Source of the DNA: Octopus bimaculoides
Taxonomy: Eukaryota
Assembly (NCBI RefSeq): GCF_001194135.2
Contig: NC_068982.1
Span: 53,743,221-53,782,441, forward strand
Direction: 5' to 3'
Length of the DNA stretch: 39,221 nt
In this document: positions 3,003 to 9,775 of the stretch, piece by piece
How the letters are laid out: the number at the start of each line of letters is the position of its first letter
Position numbering within the stretch: the stretch's first letter is position 1
Notes under the pieces: model-generated
Databases searched by the model: none
What the model was told of the DNA's origin: nothing
Seen by the model: only the letters and a program-made list of their open reading frames with translations
Made by a program: the position numbers and the translations under genes

Positions 3003-3768
3003 ATGAAGCTAATGGAAGGTGAATGCATTTATACTCCGGCCAGACCTAGCGGTCAGTTACCGACACATAATCGCAGAATGCCACAAACTTTTATCAATAC
3101 GGGCTCTAGCAGCGGGACTCGCCTTGCTGCTCAAATTTTGGATCCTCACAGGTTGTCAAAGGCTCGCCGAAAACTTTTCGTTGGTGATTCTGTACCATCA
3201 TCGGAATTGAGTGGTCCGTTTGGGAAGACTGTGACGGCAGCGGCATCTGCAGAGGAGTCCGAAGTCTGCCAACGATTATTAGAAGCATGCCAAAACAAAT
3301 GGAACTTCGATTTGGTTAATTGTGTGCCTCTGAAAGGTCGTTACGAATGGGAAAAAGTGGAACCAGAAAATGTACCAAGATTCTATTCGAAACCTTATAC
3401 CAACCCCAAACGTCGTTCTCCAAATATGGTTGCCAATGGAAGTTACAGTAGAAAACGATTCGGGGAAGACGGCCAGTCTAACGAAAGTACTACTAGCTGC
3501 CCTCCTAGCATGGATATTACAGTGCTTACTAAACTGAACAGCGACAACAACAGAAACAACAATATTATAGCTACCAACAATACTAAAGGTTGTGATCCCA
3601 ATGATATTTATAATGTCCCTACTGCGTCTATCTCAACTTCCGCAACTTTTGAACTGGAAATTACCAACGATAAACAACAGAATATTATTTCTGACGTGTG
3701 TAATGACAACCTAACACACAGCAGTACTTATTACGGTTGTCGTAATCGTAGTAGCAGTAGTAGTAGTA

Positions 3769-3807
<39 letters not shown>

Positions 3808-4335
3808 TGGGTAGTAGTAGTAGTAGTAGTATGTCGTCGACGACTAGCCGTGATGGTTTACTACAGAGGGGTAAGTCACCTCTGATGTGTTTTACAGCTC
3901 CCGTGAAAAACGTAAACACTAGTAACCTATATGGATCTCATGAACAAGACTGTAATAATGATAATAATATTAACATCAACAACAACAACAATAATAATGT
4001 TTTCTCTGAAAAGTCTGACACTTGTGATACACTAACCAATATACTCGGAGAACAGCTGGATAATAAACAACGTTCGAATTTAACGGCGATCGATAACAAG
4101 GCCACCGTTTCATTGCCGTCGTTATCATCATCATCATCATCATCATCCCCTTCTTACTCTTCATCAGCACCATCATCACCATCGTCATTATCACCACCAT
4201 CCTCATCACCACTATCCTCGTATTCTTCTTCTGCATTACCTGTATCATCATCATCATCATCATCAACAACAAAATCTTACTCTATGGAAACACTTAATGA
4301 GACGAAAACGTCGCCAAAACAAACCAAGATAGTCG
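3003..4335 (+). CDS. CDKN1B: Cip/Kip cyclin-dependent kinase inhibitor (p27Kip1/dacapo-like), main coding exon (444 codons plus 1 nt)
   Basis: The CDI domain is recognisable. KARRKLF matches the cyclin-binding RxLF (p27 ACRNLFG). CQNKWNFDLVNCVPLKGRYEWEKVEPENVPRFYSKP matches p27 SQRKWNFDFQNHKPLEGKYEWQEVEKGSLPEFYYRP. Ends in KQTKIV-G followed by GTAAGT. The symbol is family-level; orthology among p21/p27/p57 is unresolved. Confidence 0.9.
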
Positions 4336-4341
4336 GTAAGT
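4336..4341 (+). other. 5' splice donor (G|GTAAGT), phase 1
   Basis: Consensus donor immediately after the codons for QTKIV. Downstream sequence becomes AT-rich and intron-like. Confidence 0.8.
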
Positions 4342-5093
4342 CGAATTTTAATTTAATTAATTTATTATTATTGTTGATGTTGATTATAATTTATGAAAAT
4401 TGCTTGTATTATTGTATCGACCTGAAGGGATAAAATAAAAATTCAAAATAAATTGGCCACACAGTAAGATTTAAAACCAGAACGTAAAAAGGCCGGAACA
4501 GGCATCGCAATGTATTTTGTCCGACGTTCTTATAGTTGTTTCAATGCGTGAAAGTGTCCAGTGTTAAGCTCGTAGATTCATGTAAATGTATATAAATGTA
4601 TAAATTTGGTATTTATAAATTTGGTACTTGCGAATGTATATAAACAAAATCATTCTAATTGCTGCTTGCCTGTTTGAAACACGAACCACTTACCAGTAAA
4701 TTACTGTTTTTCTGTTATTAATCAACATACGCTTCACAGACAGACGGACAGATATAGGGTTCTATTCCTCGTTTTGCTTCAATACCATACCCACCCACTT
4801 TATATATAGATTGATGTCATGGATTACCTATTGCAGATACTCACGCGCACACCACCCTTCTCCATGAAAAGTGAAGGGAACAGTCCTTCCCCACACACCA
4901 CCACCATCTGGTCTATCTGTTAACAGTTCATGTACGACACAACGAAGGTCAATCGTTTTCGTTCAACCTATTCGATTATGCTTGATTAATATCTATCTAT
5001 CTCCGATTAATTAATATCCTACCGTCCTAGAAAAAAAAAAATTGAAGGGTTTTATAAAAGAAAACAAAAACGGCATTGAATTATACGTCGCAG

Positions 5094-5182
5094 TATGGCT
5101 GGTGCACTTACGGAAAAGACAGAATGGCCCCAGCTGTAGTAGTAGTAGTATCGTCGAGGAAATCCCGTTAGCAGAAAATTAA
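5094..5182 (+). CDS. Speculative terminal coding exon of CKI gene 1
   Basis: Splicing 4335 to the AG at 5092-5093 gives QTKIV-VWLVHLRKRQNGPSCSSSSIVEEIPLAEN*, a loose PIP box followed by a basic cluster. The acceptor has a poor pyrimidine tract and the expected D-F/Y residues are absent. Confidence 0.2.
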
Positions 5183-6814: not shown

Positions 6815-6878
<64 letters not shown>

Positions 6879-8339
6879 TTATTTATTCACGATCAAGTAT
6901 CGTAAAGTTACATATATATATATTTATATAACCGATGATAATAATAATTGCTGATTATGATTTTCAAAACCTTGTTTTACTTTTTCGACTGGTAACGTCC
7001 TTTTATCGTCTCTATAGTAAATATTGCTAGCGAGTAGTTACTAATTTTTTTTAAATACCTAATATTCAAATTTCATCAATAATCCTTATTTATAGATTTT
7101 AAAAAGAAAAATAGATTTGCTTTTATTATTCGTTTTCTTCAAAAAGAAAATCGTTACTTTCGTTGAAAAGAATACTAAACTTGAGAAAAATACCGAAATT
7201 TGGGTCGCTTTTTATTTTGTGATGTTTTGCGTACTGTACTACTACTAAAAGCTTTCTTAGTTTCCACCACCACCACCACTACTACTACTACTACTGCTAC
7301 TCGTATATGCGTGAGTAATATGTGTAAGAAAATCGTTTATGTTAAGCAATTTACTAAGTGCTACAACTTTGTCGTATTGGTTTTGTGTTTACAAGACCGA
7401 GGGGGGGGGGGAGCAGCATCCCGATATTCACAATAGTAGTAGTATTTTTTTCCCTAGTTCTAGACAGACACGCTGTGAAAATGGGAGCTTTTTGGATAGG
7501 TACAACTCCTCTGGCGCCGATATCATCGTTGAAATTATTAAAATTTTTTTAAAGCTATCTTGATTAATTAATAACTGCAAATATTTTTATGCTATGCATG
7601 TAGTTTTATTACTTAAAGTTATGCATGCAATCTGTATGCGCATGCATATTATGCATAAACACACACACACACACACTGAACGTATACACTCCAAATGTGT
7701 GNNNNNNNNNNNNNNNNNNNNNNNNNNNNNNNNNNNNNNNNNNNNNNNNNNNNNNNNNNNNNNNNNNNNNNNNNNNNNNNNNNNNNNNNNNNNNNNNNNN
7801 NNNNNNNNNNNNNNNNNNNNNNNNNNNNNNNNNNNNNNNNNNNNNNNNNNNNNNNNNNNNNNNNNNNNNNNNNNNNNNNNNNNNNNNNNNNNNNNNNNNN
7901 NNNNNNNNNNNNNNNNNNNNNNNNNNNNNNNNNNNNNNNNNNNNNNNNNNNNNNNNNNNNNNNNNNNNNNNNNNNNNNNNNNNNNNNNNNNNNNNNNNNN
8001 NNNNNNNNNNNNNNNNNNNNNNNNNNNNNNNNNNNNNNNNGTGTGTGTGCGTGCGTGTGCGTGTGCGTGCGCGTGCGCGTGTGCGTGTGCGTGCGTGTGC
8101 GTGCGTGCGTGTGCGTGTGTGTGTGTAAAAATTAAAACTGGAATGGGATATTTGCAGTAAGAACTACAGAATACATATGGCGTCTATATAAATCCAAGGA
8201 ATTAGAGAGAGGAAGGGAGTAAATGTGGATTAAGTTTGTTGTAGAGTGCCCGAGTGTGTGTTTGTGTGTAATGTCGAAAGAAAACGACAGAGTAGAACTG
8301 CAAAGGGGGTAAATGCGATAGAGTAAGAGTGCGACTGAC

Positions 8340-8433
8340 TGACGTATCGTGTTAGACGCTAGTGCGTGATGGGCGGAGCTTATTTGGCTTGACTATAAAT
8401 ACAGAGCGAGCGCCCAGCCTGTTACTATTTAGT
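8340..8433 (+). promoter_or_regulatory. Core promoter of CKI gene 2: CRE-like TGACGT, GC box, TATA box, Inr-like site
   Basis: TGACGT at 8340-8345, GGGCGGAG at 8371-8378, TATAAATA at 8394-8401, and pyrimidine-flanked A residues at 8424 and 8431, about 30 nt after the TATA. Canonical order and spacing. Confidence 0.6.
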
Positions 8434-9130
8434 GACTTGTTCTCAAGCAGACTACTGCTCTCTTGCGACCCGTTATGAGCGTCACAGTCGAGACGAATTT
8501 AACGTTACTACTATCATTATTATCAATATTGCAATCGTCATCTTCACTCCGACTGTTGAACAACCTAACTGAAGGGAAACTAATGACTCTCAGTTTCTTT
8601 AAAGTTTTTGAGAAACTAAAACGGAATACTTATTCGTCGTGTTCGGCAAGTGATTTTAAGAATATAAGGCGTTAGTTAGTAAATAATAATACTTACTATA
8701 TATGCCACCGTGGATTCCTTACCACAGTTCACATCATTAAACAGATACATCATCACATTTTAATTTACAACACCAAATTTTCATCGAAATTTTCTTTTTA
8801 TTTCTGGAAACGATTGAACCAAACTACTTATAACGAGAAAATCACGAAAAGAAAAAAAACAAATTATTGGGAAAATTATCTTTCCCTCTTTCTCACGAAT
8901 TCTGACTCATACACATATTCTGTGTTTATGTGTTTATAACAATATACACACCTACTGAATCACAAATTAACAGTACAACTTCGATTACTTTTATTTTCTC
9001 AATCTTTTTTTACAAACGGATCGGATATTAAAAAAAAGCAACTAAATTTAGATTTGGATTTTATCTTTTGTTATATAGTCAACAATTTTCCATCATTATT
9101 AAGGATTTATTTTTAAAGAAATATTCCAAG

Positions 9131-9775
9131 ATGTCAAAGGTAGCAGTAAAACGCCCAGCTCAGTATTGCCTAACGTTCGACGATGACAACTGCAGACAGC
9201 CGCGCTTTGACAGTAATATTGCGACGGAGAGAGATACTACTGGCCGACAATACGACCACGATTTTAACAACAACATTTACAAAAAAGCTATCGAAGATTT
9301 GATAGTTGCGGAACTGAAAAAGAAACTCGAAGAGGAGGCACGCCGCTTTAAAAAGAAGTGGAACTATGATTTAACAGATCAAAAATTCCTGTCTGGTGAC
9401 TATTGTTGGGAAGCAAAATCTGCCAAGTCCTTTCCGATATCTTACGCTAAGCATTGTTTTTATTCGTACTACGGAGCTCAGCCGCTGTACTTGAACATTG
9501 ATGAGTCGGGGGTGGAACCTGACGACAATTTAAAAGCTTACGACGACAGCGATAGCGGAACTGTTACACCACAACAAACTACAACTGATGTACTGTCATC
9601 GAACGACGAAATAGCAACAGAAACTAATGATGCTCGATCACTTGGAAATCCTGTAACTACTATTTGTAACGAAAACGCGGAAAACGCTGATGGCTCCTTA
9701 CGCTTAATACCTATAATTTGTTACAAACCCAGGGATTCAGAAGGCGATATTATTGATCGTCAAAGGCCAAACTGA
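9131..9775 (+). CDS. Second, divergent Cip/Kip CDK inhibitor-like protein (214 aa, single coding exon)
   Basis: First ATG at 9131 (MSKVAVKRPAQYCLTF...). The CDK-binding half of the CDI is recognisable: EARRFKKKWNYDLTDQKFLSGDYCWEAKSAKSFPISYAK aligns with p27 EASQRKWNFDFQNHKPLEGKYEWQEVEKGSLPEFYYR. Uninterrupted, non-repetitive ORF. Confidence 0.8.
   Translation: MSKVAVKRPAQYCLTFDDDNCRQPRFDSNIATERDTTGRQYDHDFNNNIYKKAIEDLIVAELKKKLEEEARRFKKKWNYDLTDQKFLSGDYCWEAKSAKSFPISYAKHCFYSYYGAQPLYLNIDESGVEPDDNLKAYDDSDSGTVTPQQTTTDVLSSNDEIATETNDARSLGNPVTTICNENAENADGSLRLIPIICYKPRDSEGDIIDRQRPN

What the first reader, a model, noticed from the sequence alone, without database searches (positions are those of the whole stretch)
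3003..9775. Tandem pair of Cip/Kip CDK inhibitor genes
Seen in sequence: two separate CDI-domain ORFs on the same strand, with starts about 6 kb apart, similar only within the CDI core. Established: Drosophila has a single Cip/Kip gene (dacapo), vertebrate p21/p27/p57 are unlinked paralogs, and C. elegans cki-1 and cki-2 are adjacent. Inference: an old, possibly cephalopod-specific tandem duplication created a two-gene cell-cycle brake cluster with divided roles.
Basis: partly seen in the sequence, partly recalled or inferred. Interest (0 to 1): 0.7.

Follow-up and report, generated by a model that had tools for sequence, protein, structure and literature searches.

The report
Nested pair of octopus CDK-inhibitor genes
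Two real Cip/Kip cell-cycle-brake genes are here, but the second, a very diverged copy found so far only in octopods, lies inside the intron of the first rather than beside it; both are already annotated without names in a sister species, so the novelty is modest.

Summary
ORF1 (3003-) and ORF2 (9131-9775) both pass Pfam's curated CDI cut-off, and they resemble each other only in the CDI core. The two assembly gaps lie in microsatellites between the ORFs. A gapless O. sinensis contig is collinear across them.

The geometry is not a simple tandem. Gene 1 has a second, 25-codon terminal exon at about 12619-12695. Its first 5 nt and its acceptor are hidden in the gap 12212-12623. Gene 2 is therefore nested, on the same strand, in gene 1's roughly 8.3 kb intron. 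The arrangement is conserved in O. sinensis and Argonauta hians.

Gene 1 is the orthodox spiralian CKI, with an RRKLF cyclin-docking motif, a CDI domain, a PIP-degron-like motif split by the intron, and an NLS. Gene 2 keeps the CDK-binding residues. It has Tyr in place of the RxL arginine and no PIP box or NLS. It has its own conserved GC-box/TATA promoter and a conserved 61-68-codon upstream ORF, and it is under purifying selection (dN/dS about 0.3).

An exhaustive profile search finds gene 2 only in octopods. Both O. sinensis orthologues are already in RefSeq and in a published CKI data set, but their linkage is not described there. Division of roles is inferred from motifs only.

The parts
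3003..4335 (+). Gene 1 (orthodox Cip/Kip CKI), coding exon 1: 444 codons plus 1 nt (phase 1). The long C-terminal part is rich in Ser and Asn and is encoded by trinucleotide repeats.
   Evidence: ORF list. Pfam CDI 40.5 bits. Orthologous exon in O. sinensis and Argonauta, ending at the same KQTKIV|G donor. dN/dS 0.26-0.47.
3165..3179 (+). Gene 1 cyclin-docking (Cy/RxL) motif R55-R-K-L-F59.
   Evidence: Invariant K53, R56, K57, L58 and F59 across three species. Aligns with the RRCLFG/CRNLFG motif of other spiralian CKIs.
3249..3413 (+). Gene 1 CDK-binding part of the CDI/KID: KWNFDLVNCVPLKGRYEWEKVEPENVPRFY.
   Evidence: Aligned to p27 residues 21-75 of PDB 1JSU chain C, E 4.8e-12. Pfam match at residues 84-119.
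4336..12618 (+). Gene 1 intron (about 8.3 kb, donor GTAAGT at 4336-4341). It contains gaps 6688-6814, 7702-8040 and 9873-9922, part of gap 12212-12623, and the whole of gene 2. The 3' end coordinate is estimated, because the acceptor is unread.
   Evidence: O. sinensis gene call L001 4103..13636 spans the gene-2 orthologue at 10001-10666. Acceptors ttttttgcag|AT (O. sinensis) and tttacag|AG (Argonauta) are in the same phase. Collinearity shown.
8371..8401 (+). Gene 2 core promoter: GC box GGGCGG (8371-8376) and TATAAATA (8394-8401). The TSS is inferred to lie near 8425-8430.
   Evidence: The block GGGCGGAGCTTAT..ACTATAAATAC is conserved in the window, O. sinensis, the Logan octopus and Argonauta, although synonymous sites are saturated. 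The TSS position is an inference.
8475..8675 (+). Conserved upstream small ORF (66 codons, MSVTVET...SFFKVFEKLKRNTYSSCSASDFKNIRR*) in the presumed gene-2 leader.
   Evidence: Intact in four species (61-68 codons) with the same start and the same last seven residues and stop. All indels are in frame. pN/pS 0.18-0.54. No Pfam family. That it lies on the gene-2 mRNA is an inference.
8679..9078 (+). Possible 5'-UTR intron of gene 2: donor-like GTAAAT at 8679-8684, acceptor-like ttttgttatatag ending at 9078.
   Evidence: DNA conservation with Argonauta stops just after the small ORF's stop, next to a GTAA[AG] in all four species, and resumes only at the ATG of the CDI ORF. No RNA data; inference only.
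9131..9775 (+). Gene 2 (diverged Cip/Kip paralogue), single-exon CDS of 214 codons plus stop.
   Evidence: Pfam CDI 29.6 bits. Orthologues P0001 (O. sinensis LOC118761713), P0002 and P0003 (Argonauta). N- and C-termini and the stop are conserved. dN/dS 0.27-0.36. No conserved internal splice donor.
9164..9178 (+). Gene 2 degenerate Cy motif Y12-C-L-T-F16, with Tyr where RxL has Arg.
   Evidence: MAFFT aligns KRPAQY[CR]LTFD with RRCL-FG of other spiralian CKIs and with RRLTFD of a Helobdella CKI. No RxL pattern is found in any of the four orthologues at this position.
9308..9448 (+). Gene 2 CDK-binding part of the CDI: KKWNYDLTDQKFLSGDYCWEAKSAKSFPISY.
   Evidence: Pfam match at residues 60-94. 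Profile alignment to p27 in 6P8E/1JSU, with W, N, D, G, Y, W, P and Y columns kept. These residues are invariant in four species.
12624..12695 (+). Gene 1 terminal coding exon, readable part: MPHRKRTLSYCHTGNKEKKLRKE plus stop. The acceptor and the first 5 nt (about 12619-12623) are inside gap 12212-12623. The exon completes the PIP-degron-like motif KQTKIV|DFMPHRK and carries basic NLS-like clusters.
   Evidence: tblastn E 1e-13 to the O. sinensis exon. Argonauta exon EFMQHKKRTLS at L002 13442-13507. RefSeq protein C-terminus. PIP and degron regular expressions match.

Best explanation
The locus is a host-and-nested pair of Cip/Kip CDK-inhibitor paralogues, conserved in octopods.

Gene 1 is the orthodox spiralian CKI. 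Exon 1 (3003-4335) encodes the RRKLF cyclin-docking motif, the CDK-binding CDI segment and a long low-complexity tail. A 25-codon exon 2 (about 12619-12695) completes a PIP-degron-like motif (QTKIV|DFMPHRK) and supplies basic NLS-like clusters. By analogy with p21, I infer that gene 1 inhibits cyclin-CDK complexes and is removed in S phase through PCNA and CRL4-Cdt2.

Gene 2 (9131-9775) lies on the same strand inside gene 1's single coding intron. It has its own conserved GC-box/TATA promoter, a conserved small upstream ORF and an unspliced CDS. It keeps the CDK-contacting residues, including the Tyr88-equivalent. It has Tyr for the RxL arginine, a much longer linker, and no PIP box, PIP degron or NLS.

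I infer that gene 2 arose by local duplication of gene 1's first exon into its intron before the Octopus-Argonauta split and then diverged fast. I also infer that it now acts as a CDK-binding brake whose abundance is set differently from gene 1's: it escapes PCNA-coupled proteolysis, is perhaps gated in translation by the upstream ORF, and is possibly in transcriptional competition with its host.

Shown: the domains, the motifs, the nesting, the conservation and the purifying selection. Inferred: the duplication mechanism, the inhibitory activity, the degradation route, the uORF function and the expression.
For: - CDI domains pass the curated cut-off in both genes, and only p27/p21 are hit in the PDB.
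- Nesting: the O. sinensis gene call spans the gene-2 orthologue. A conserved terminal exon lies downstream of gene 2 in the window, O. sinensis and Argonauta, with the same intron phase. The RefSeq protein ends KQTKIVDFMPHRKR....
- The locus is collinear with a gapless relative across all gaps.
- Other molluscan CKIs carry RRCLFG at the N-terminus and Q..I.DFM..RKR at the C-terminus, as gene 1 does.
- The four gene-2 orthologues have conserved ends and a conserved stop, dN/dS 0.27-0.36, and no conserved internal donor.
- The gene-2 promoter block is conserved as far as Argonauta.
- The upstream ORF is intact with in-frame indels in four species.
- Gene 2 has no PIP, degron or RxL pattern, whereas gene 1 has them.
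- The gene-2 profile finds only octopod proteins among 1.84 billion representatives.
- The PIP box with a TD motif and a basic residue at +4 is the described CRL4-Cdt2 degron, and p21 is degraded through it (PMC3356132).
Against: - No RNA evidence was available, so the TSS, the 5'-UTR intron, the polyA site, the presence of the small ORF on the gene-2 mRNA and the gene-1 splice in the window species are all inferred.
- The window's own acceptor for exon 2 is unread because it lies in a gap.
- Gene 1's PIP-like motif departs from the canonical degron: V replaces T of the TD motif, and M replaces the second aromatic residue.
- The 53-column CDI neighbour-joining tree gives 0% support for gene 1 plus gene 2 as sisters. 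The published tree groups them only on very long branches, together with a leech protein. A local, lineage-specific duplication is therefore supported by position, not by phylogeny.
- The protein database failed to return gene-1 orthologues that do exist (versus 40), so the absence of gene 2 outside octopods is weak negative evidence.
- No biochemical activity was tested. The AlphaFold model is disordered (mean pLDDT 34), as expected for the family, and adds nothing decisive.
Confidence: 0.65

Rival explanations
1. Simple tandem duplicates: two non-overlapping, independently transcribed CKI genes lying side by side, with gene 1 ending before gene 2 begins.
For: The Argonauta annotation ends gene 1 at L002 3190, upstream of gene 2. 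Gene 2 has its own conserved promoter. If the intron is retained, ORF1 can terminate within it at 4433.
Against: The alternative Argonauta last exon (GIVNFNNLRV...) has no counterpart in Octopus. The read-through tails differ completely between species. The exon downstream of gene 2 is conserved in three species, in the same phase, and completes the Q..I.DFM..RKR motif that other molluscan CKIs carry. The RefSeq model uses it.
Confidence: 0.08
2. One gene with two alternative, CDI-encoding first exons and two promoters, both spliced to the shared terminal exon, so that ORF2 is an isoform of gene 1 rather than a separate gene.
For: ORF2 lies between exon 1 and exon 2 on the same strand. This layout is what a duplication of exon 1 would first create. 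A weak phase-1 donor, CTG|GTGACT, exists at 9396.
Against: That donor lies in the middle of the CDI and is absent in the Logan octopus and in Argonauta. The ORF2 C-terminus LIPI.C.K..D.E.DI...QRPN and its stop codon are conserved as far as Argonauta. RefSeq and the Argonauta annotation both call a single-exon CDS.
Confidence: 0.06
3. Gene 2 is expressed and conserved but is no longer a CDK inhibitor. It might be a CDK-binding assembly factor or adaptor, or have an unrelated role, after losing cyclin docking.
For: The RxL arginine is replaced by Tyr in all four orthologues. The linker is about twice the usual length. The CDI score is only 4.6 bits above the cut-off. The conserved C-terminal motif has no counterpart in known CKIs.
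Against: The residues that p27 uses to contact CDK2 (WNxD, G.Y.W, P..Y) are invariant across octopods. The Leu and Phe of the Cy motif are retained.
Confidence: 0.15
4. Artefact: the pairing results from a scaffold misjoin across the N gaps, or ORF2 is a decaying pseudogene or a chance ORF.
For: There are four gaps between 4336 and 12623. The window's own gene-2 product is not on record in the gene index.
Against: The gapless O. sinensis contig and the 5.7 Mb Argonauta contig show the same order. The ORF is intact in four species with dN/dS about 0.3. Pfam E-value is 7.5e-7.
Confidence: 0.02

Closest known systems
Octopus sinensis XP_029656860.1 ('uncharacterized protein DDB_G0271670') and XP_036355746.1 (LOC118761713); Argonauta hians Ahia01_001024500 and its upstream neighbour
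   Same: These are direct orthologues of gene 1 and gene 2 (87% and 52% protein identity for gene 2). Order, strand and nesting are the same. Both O. sinensis proteins were used as spiralian CKI homologues in PMC12693960 table S7.
   Different: They are annotated only as uncharacterized or hypothetical proteins. Neither the annotation nor the passages and files I read in that paper mention the linkage, the nesting, the motif losses or the upstream ORF. The Argonauta gene-1 model appears to end in a wrong last exon.
Human p27Kip1 (CDKN1B) kinase-inhibitory domain, PDB 1JSU chain C
   Same: Both genes align to the linker helix, beta-hairpin (WNFDF), beta-strand (G.YEW) and 3-10 helix (P.FY) that bind CDK2. 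Gene 1 also has the RxLF cyclin-docking motif. Gene 2 is predicted to be disordered apart from a long helix before the WNYD motif.
   Different: Gene 2 lacks the RxL arginine, and its Cy-like motif lies 61 residues before the Trp (28 in p27). Mammalian p27 has no PIP degron, from my own knowledge. Gene 1's C-terminus resembles p21-type PIP degrons instead.
Other spiralian single-copy CKIs (Mytilus, Lottia, Biomphalaria, Haliotis, Saccostrea; PMC12693960 table S7)
   Same: Gene 1 shares their architecture: N-terminal RRCLFG-type motif, CDI, and C-terminal Q..I.DFM..RKR followed by basic residues.
   Different: Gene 1 is two to three times longer because of Ser/Asn repeat expansions. No gene-2-like second copy is listed for the other molluscs, apart from the two near-identical Crassostrea virginica loci.
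Caenorhabditis elegans cki-1/cki-2, an adjacent Cip/Kip pair
   Same: A lineage-specific local duplication of a Cip/Kip gene, with both copies retained on one strand.
   Different: To my knowledge the worm genes are side by side, not one inside the other's intron. Not checked here.
p21Cip1 and the PIP degron recognised by CRL4-Cdt2 (PMC3356132). Xic1, Dacapo and CKI-1 are added from my own knowledge.
   Same: Gene 1's C-terminus QTKIVDFMPHRK has Q at position 1, an aliphatic residue at 4, D at 6, F at 7 and a basic residue at +4.
   Different: V replaces T of the TD motif, and M replaces the second aromatic residue. PCNA binding and degradation were not tested. Gene 2 has no such motif.
Conserved-peptide upstream ORFs that gate translation of a downstream ORF (a general class; uORFs in CDK-inhibitor leaders are recalled from my own knowledge)
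   Same: The small ORF 8475-8675 lies between the conserved promoter and the CDI ORF. Its peptide, especially the last seven residues and the stop, is conserved with mostly synonymous changes.
   Different: It has not been shown to be on the same mRNA, to be translated, or to affect gene 2. At 61-68 codons it is long for a regulatory uORF and could be a micropeptide gene.

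Membership tests
Cip/Kip CDK inhibitors (Pfam CDI, PF02234): gene 1 | CDI domain scoring above Pfam's gathering threshold | tested here: met
   40.5 bits against a cut-off of 25, E 2.9e-10. p27 1JSU_C E 4.8e-12.
Cip/Kip CDK inhibitors: gene 1 | Cyclin-docking RxL(F) motif N-terminal to the CDK-binding segment | tested here: met
   R56-K-L-F59 is invariant in three species and aligns with RRCLFG/CRNLFG of other spiralian CKIs.
Cip/Kip CDK inhibitors: gene 1 | CDK-contact residues (WNFD hairpin, G.YEW strand, P.FY 3-10 helix with the Tyr88 equivalent) | tested here: met
   KWNFDLVNCVPLKGRYEWEKVEPENVPRFY aligned residue by residue to p27.
p21/Xic1/Dacapo-type CKIs with a C-terminal PIP degron: gene 1 | Q-x-x-[ILMV]-T-D-[FY]-[FY] followed by a basic residue at +4 | tested here: inconclusive
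   QTKIVDFMPHRK matches a relaxed pattern and the molluscan consensus. It has V for T and M for the second aromatic residue. PCNA binding cannot be tested here.
Cip/Kip CDK inhibitors: gene 2 | CDI domain scoring above Pfam's gathering threshold | tested here: met
   29.6 bits against a cut-off of 25, E 7.5e-7. Precomputed PF02234 on all three orthologues. The profile hits only p27 chains in the PDB, E 1.3e-3.
Cip/Kip CDK inhibitors: gene 2 | Cyclin-docking RxL(F) motif | tested here: not met
   The aligned position reads Y-[CR]-L-T-F. The first Arg is Tyr in all four orthologues and there is no RxL pattern at this position. Leu and Phe are retained, so a weakened or altered docking site is possible.
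Cip/Kip CDK inhibitors: gene 2 | CDK-contact residues | tested here: met
   W77, N78, D80, G89, Y91, W93, P102 and Y105 are invariant in four species and aligned to p27 W60...Y88.
Cip/Kip CDK inhibitors: both genes | Stoichiometric inhibition of cyclin-CDK kinase activity | not testable with these tools
   Needs recombinant protein and kinase assays.
p21-type PIP-degron CKIs: gene 2 | PIP box or PIP degron and a C-terminal NLS | tested here: not met
   No match to relaxed PIP or degron patterns in any of the four orthologues. The only basic clusters lie in the linker helix.
Nested (intron-hosted) gene pair | The whole inner gene lies between two exons that are spliced together in the host mRNA | tested here: met
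   The O. sinensis gene call 4103..13636 encloses 10001-10666. The RefSeq protein joins KQTKIV to DFMPHRKR. The same exon, in the same phase, is present in the window and in Argonauta. Direct splice evidence in the window's species is not available.
Conserved-peptide uORF | Peptide-level conservation of an ORF upstream of the main ORF | tested here: met
   Four species, in-frame indels only, identical start and end, pN/pS 0.18-0.54.
Conserved-peptide uORF | Location on the same mRNA, and a translational effect on the main ORF | not testable with these tools
   No transcript or ribosome-profiling data are available here. The Logan contigs end in microsatellites and cannot be shown to come from RNA.

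The most novel reading that the evidence does not exclude
Octopods carry a lineage-restricted second Cip/Kip brake that was born inside its parent gene's intron. It has shed both the PCNA-coupled degron and the canonical cyclin-docking arginine. It is controlled by a conserved-peptide upstream ORF and by transcriptional or polyadenylation competition with its host. A single locus could then switch between a brake destroyed in S phase and a proteolysis-resistant brake, which may matter for the very large, long-lived post-mitotic neuron populations of octopods.
Probability: 0.25. Interest if true: 0.55.

Novelty: new variant of a known kind. Interest (0 to 1): 0.4.

Why it matters
Cip/Kip inhibitors decide when cells leave the cell cycle. 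Lineage-specific duplicates (vertebrate p21/p27/p57, worm cki-1/cki-2) have repeatedly divided that task between them.

This locus offers a compact natural experiment. The parent copy has the full motif set. A daughter copy nested in the parent's intron keeps only the CDK-binding core and has acquired its own promoter and upstream ORF.

If the functional inferences hold, the locus would show how degradation control and cyclin docking can be uncoupled from CDK binding. It would also give cephalopod developmental biologists two distinct markers or handles for cell-cycle exit.

On the practical side, the result corrects gene models. Gene 1's last exon is split by an assembly gap in this window and appears mis-called in Argonauta. 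Both proteins are unnamed in RefSeq.

Tried and rejected
- Word-indexed protein searches with gene 1's N-terminus, first alone and then as a three-species alignment, returned nothing. They did not even return the O. sinensis orthologue that exists in RefSeq (versus 40). That database is therefore blind to gene 1, and I did not use its silence as evidence.
- The exhaustive profile search with gene 2 returned only the two octopod clusters. This says nothing about where gene 2 came from.
- A neighbour-joining tree with 300 bootstraps on the 53-column CDI core does not resolve the relation of gene 1, gene 2 and other spiralian CKIs. A first attempt with Biopython timed out.
- The window's own gene-2 protein is not on record in the gene index, so no better assembly of the same species could be fetched.
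- The Logan contigs L003-L005 begin and end in microsatellites and are collinear with genomic DNA upstream of the promoter. They cannot serve as transcript evidence. Their run accessions appear in no searchable paper.
- The alternative-first-exon idea found no conserved in-frame donor in ORF2.
- AlphaFold on the four-sequence alignment gave mean pLDDT 34, so no fold search was run.
- Rfam found nothing in the window at gathering thresholds. Pfam found nothing for four other long ORFs or for the small ORF.
- A whole-window tblastx against Argonauta was swamped by microsatellite translations.
- The resemblance of the small ORF's end (DFKNIRR) to the DFM..RKR of CKI C-termini was considered and set aside as too short to mean anything.
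- The sub-threshold DUF4771 hit on gene 2 (20.2 bits against 27) overlaps the CDI and was ignored.

Full report
**1. The observation**

The window is AT-rich (36% G+C) scaffold sequence with twelve N gaps, nearly all flanked by microsatellites.

ORF1 starts at 3003 and ORF2 runs 9131-9775 on the + strand. Their starts are 6128 bp apart. Against Pfam-A both pass the curated cut-off of the CDI family PF02234 (25 bits). ORF1 scores 40.5 bits (E 2.9e-10, residues 84-119). ORF2 scores 29.6 bits (E 7.5e-7, residues 60-94).

BLASTP between them aligns only 58 residues of the CDI core (28% identity, E 1e-5). Against every PDB sequence, gene 1 hits only p27/p21 chains, with 1JSU chain C at E 4.8e-12. 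A four-species profile of gene 2 hits only p27 chains, with a best E of 1.3e-3.

A CDI HMM run over all six-frame open segments finds exactly two copies in the window, two in the O. sinensis locus and two in the Argonauta locus.

**2. The gaps**

The two gaps flagged by the scan's program (6688-6814 and 7702-8040) lie in (CA)n/(GT)n tracts between the ORFs. No CDI reading frame touches them.

A gapless O. sinensis contig (VCDQ01000406.1, locus L001) is collinear with window 84-19834 in one orientation, and every window gap falls between consecutive alignment blocks. Gapless Logan contigs (L003-L005) also bridge the second gap. There the window has 421 bp between anchors, while both relatives have about 117 bp. 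The estimated gap length is therefore probably too long, or the repeat is expanded in this species.

A third gap matters more than the two that were flagged (see section 3).

**3. Gene structure: nested, not tandem**

ORF1 does not end at its stop (4433). It ends at a canonical donor, G|GTAAGT, with the last exon base at 4335 and in phase 1.

In O. sinensis the called CDI gene spans L001 4103-13636 (467 aa) and so encloses the gene-2 orthologue at 10001-10666. Its last exon follows ttttttgcag and reads (D)FMPHRKRTLSYCHTGNREKKLRKE*. The RefSeq protein XP_029656860.1 printed in PMC12693960 table S7 ends ...KQTKIVDFMPHRKRTLSYCHTGNREKKLRKE.

In the window the same exon is at 12624-12695 (MPHRKRTLSYCHTGNKEKKLRKE*, tblastn E 1e-13). 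It starts immediately after gap 12212-12623, so its acceptor and first five bases are unread.

In Argonauta hians the equivalent exon (tttacag|AG TTT ATG..., EFMQHKKRTLS...) lies at L002 13442-13507, again downstream of the gene-2 orthologue (10001-10678) and in the same phase. The Argonauta annotation instead ends gene 1 at L002 3190 in an exon with no Octopus counterpart. I read that as a mis-call.

Gene 2 is therefore nested, on the same strand, in gene 1's roughly 8.3 kb intron. This has been so since before Octopus and Argonauta diverged. Synonymous sites between the two are saturated.

**4. Gene 1 is the orthodox spiralian CKI**

Aligned with the RefSeq spiralian CKIs of table S7, gene 1 has the N-terminal cyclin-docking motif: RRKLF, against RRCLFG or CRNLFG elsewhere. 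It has the CDK-contact segment. Across the exon junction it has QTKIV|DFMPHRK followed by basic clusters. This parallels Mytilus QTQISAFMPKRKR, Biomphalaria QSYITDFMPAKKRR and Lottia QSRISDFMNIRKRR.

This matches a relaxed PIP-box and PIP-degron pattern. The canonical degron has a TD motif and a basic residue at +4, and it drives CRL4-Cdt2 destruction of p21 (PMC3356132). Gene 1 has V for T and M for the second aromatic residue, so I score membership in that subclass as inconclusive.

The rest of exon 1 is Ser/Asn-rich (19% S, 13% N) and is encoded by trinucleotide repeats whose length varies between species. dN/dS is 0.26-0.47.

**5. Gene 2 is a conserved, strongly diverged paralogue**

Orthologues are O. 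sinensis LOC118761713 (87% identity), a Logan octopus (80%) and Argonauta Ahia01_001024500 (52%).

The N-terminus MSKVAVKRPAQY[CR]LTF.DDNCR, the CDI core and the C-terminus LIPI.C.K..D.E.DI...QRPN plus stop are all conserved. dN/dS among the three Octopus sequences is 0.27-0.36, and the frame is intact in Argonauta. No splice donor inside the ORF is conserved, so it is a self-contained CDS rather than an alternative first exon.

The p27 CDK-contact residues are invariant (W77, N78, D80, G89, Y91, W93, P102, Y105).

MAFFT places KRPAQY[CR]LTFD on the RRCL-FG column block of other CKIs and next to RRLTFD of a Helobdella CKI. This is a degenerate Cy motif. The arginine is Tyr in all four species, while Leu and Phe remain. 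It lies 61 residues before the Trp, against 28 in p27.

No PIP box, degron or C-terminal basic cluster exists in any orthologue. AlphaFold predicts disorder with one long helix (residues 46-77) ahead of WNYD (mean pLDDT 34). This fits an intrinsically disordered KID but is not evidence of anything more.

**6. Gene 2's own control region**

A GC box (8371-8376) and TATAAATA (8394-8401) form a block, GGGCGGAGCTTAT..ACTATAAATAC, that is conserved in all four species. In Argonauta it lies 777 nt before the ATG.

Downstream of it, an ORF at 8475-8675 (66 codons) is intact in all four species (61-68 codons). It begins MSV.VET and ends DFKNIRR* in all four. All of its indels are multiples of three, and pN/pS is 0.18-0.54. 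In the blocks conserved with Argonauta, the five differences I examined by eye are all synonymous (F, E, K, R, R).

DNA conservation stops a few bases after its stop codon, at a GTAA[AG]. It resumes only at the ATG of the CDI ORF, which is preceded by an acceptor-like tract ending at 9078.

My reading is a conserved-peptide upstream ORF, or a first cistron, in the gene-2 leader, possibly followed by a 5'-UTR intron. This is an inference, because no transcript data were available.

**7. Age and origin**

An exhaustive HMMER profile search of 1.84 billion representative proteins with gene 2 finds only the Octopus and Argonauta clusters at E <= 0.001. Apart from near-identical oyster duplicates, the table S7 molluscs list one CKI type each.

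The CDI core is too short to resolve history. In my neighbour-joining tree each gene is monophyletic at 100%, but gene 1 plus gene 2 gets 0% support. Gene 2's core is no closer to gene 1 (33% identity) than to Pomacea (37%). The published tree groups the two O. sinensis proteins with a leech protein on very long branches.

The position inside the parent's intron, on the same strand, is the best argument for a local duplication of exon 1 followed by fast divergence. I could not search squid, cuttlefish or Nautilus genomes, so 'cephalopod-specific' remains open and 'octopod-conserved' is what is shown.

**8. What is known already**

Both O. sinensis proteins are in RefSeq as uncharacterized proteins and were included as CKI homologues in PMC12693960. 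That paper says only that O. sinensis and Helobdella sequences cluster oddly with CDKN1B.

The library of open-access papers and preprints that I could search holds no paper with LOC118761713. It holds none that combines octopus with dacapo or with cyclin-dependent kinase inhibitor in a relevant way.

The existence of two octopus CKI homologues is therefore on record. In that library I found no description of the nesting, the motif losses, the promoter or the upstream ORF.

**9. Verdict**

The pair is real and old, but nested rather than tandem. Its taxonomic range is shown only for octopods. Division of labour is inferred from motifs only.
- Lineage-specific CKI duplications are common. This is a new variant of a known kind with some neat structural features, and it is of moderate interest (0.4).

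Noticed in passing
window 8475-8675 (+); L001 9383-9580; L003 839-1024; L002 9303-9509: A small ORF of 61-68 codons lies between gene 2's conserved TATA promoter and its CDI ORF. It is intact in four species, has an identical start (MSV.VET) and end (DFKNIRR*), has in-frame indels only, and gives pN/pS 0.18-0.54. It has no Pfam family. It is a candidate conserved-peptide uORF or micropeptide.
   Followed up: partly
window 12212-12623 (gap) and 12624-12695: This gap, outside the finding's range, swallows the splice acceptor and the first 5 nt of gene 1's terminal exon. Any gene model built on this assembly alone will truncate or mis-terminate gene 1.
   Followed up: yes
L002 (Argonauta hians BAAFZT010000059.1) 2927-3190 versus 13442-13510: The deposited Argonauta gene-1 model ends in a nearby exon (GIVNFNNLRV...) that has no Octopus counterpart. 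The conserved PIP-motif exon lies 10.5 kb downstream, beyond gene 2. This is probably an annotation error.
   Followed up: partly
window 13366-13401, 14769-14826, 15981-16029, 16722-16884, 18261-18330: Five collinear AT-rich non-coding blocks downstream of gene 1's stop are conserved with Argonauta (71-85% identity). They may belong to a very long gene-1 3'UTR or be downstream regulatory elements.
   Followed up: partly
window 7702-8040: The estimated gap length (339 N, 421 bp between anchors) is about 300 bp longer than the same interval in two gapless relatives (about 117 bp). Either the estimate is too long or the (GT)n tract is expanded.
   Followed up: yes
window 3750-3900 and 4120-4290 (inside gene 1 exon 1): Coding trinucleotide repeats give poly-Ser and poly-Asn runs. 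The 3750-3900 bin drops to 67% identity with O. sinensis through length variation, so the CKI tail is a rapidly changing low-complexity region.
   Followed up: partly
window 29149-29246 (+) and 31506-31603 (-); also 21085-21908, 32456-32583, 35494-35732: These look like copies of interspersed repeats. The first family also occurs in Argonauta (L002 19241-19338), and the second matches L001 237-1051 in both orientations. They are probably SINE-like or other mobile elements and were not classified.
   Followed up: no
window 20210-20614 (-), 26260-26655 (-): Two non-repetitive ORFs of 131-134 aa have no Pfam hit at E <= 0.01. Whether they are coding is unknown.
   Followed up: partly
databases (versus 9, 40): The word-indexed protein collection does not return gene-1 orthologues that are present in RefSeq and in the gene-position index. 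The window's own gene-2 product is not on record. Negative results from these indexes for this locus are unreliable.
   Followed up: yes
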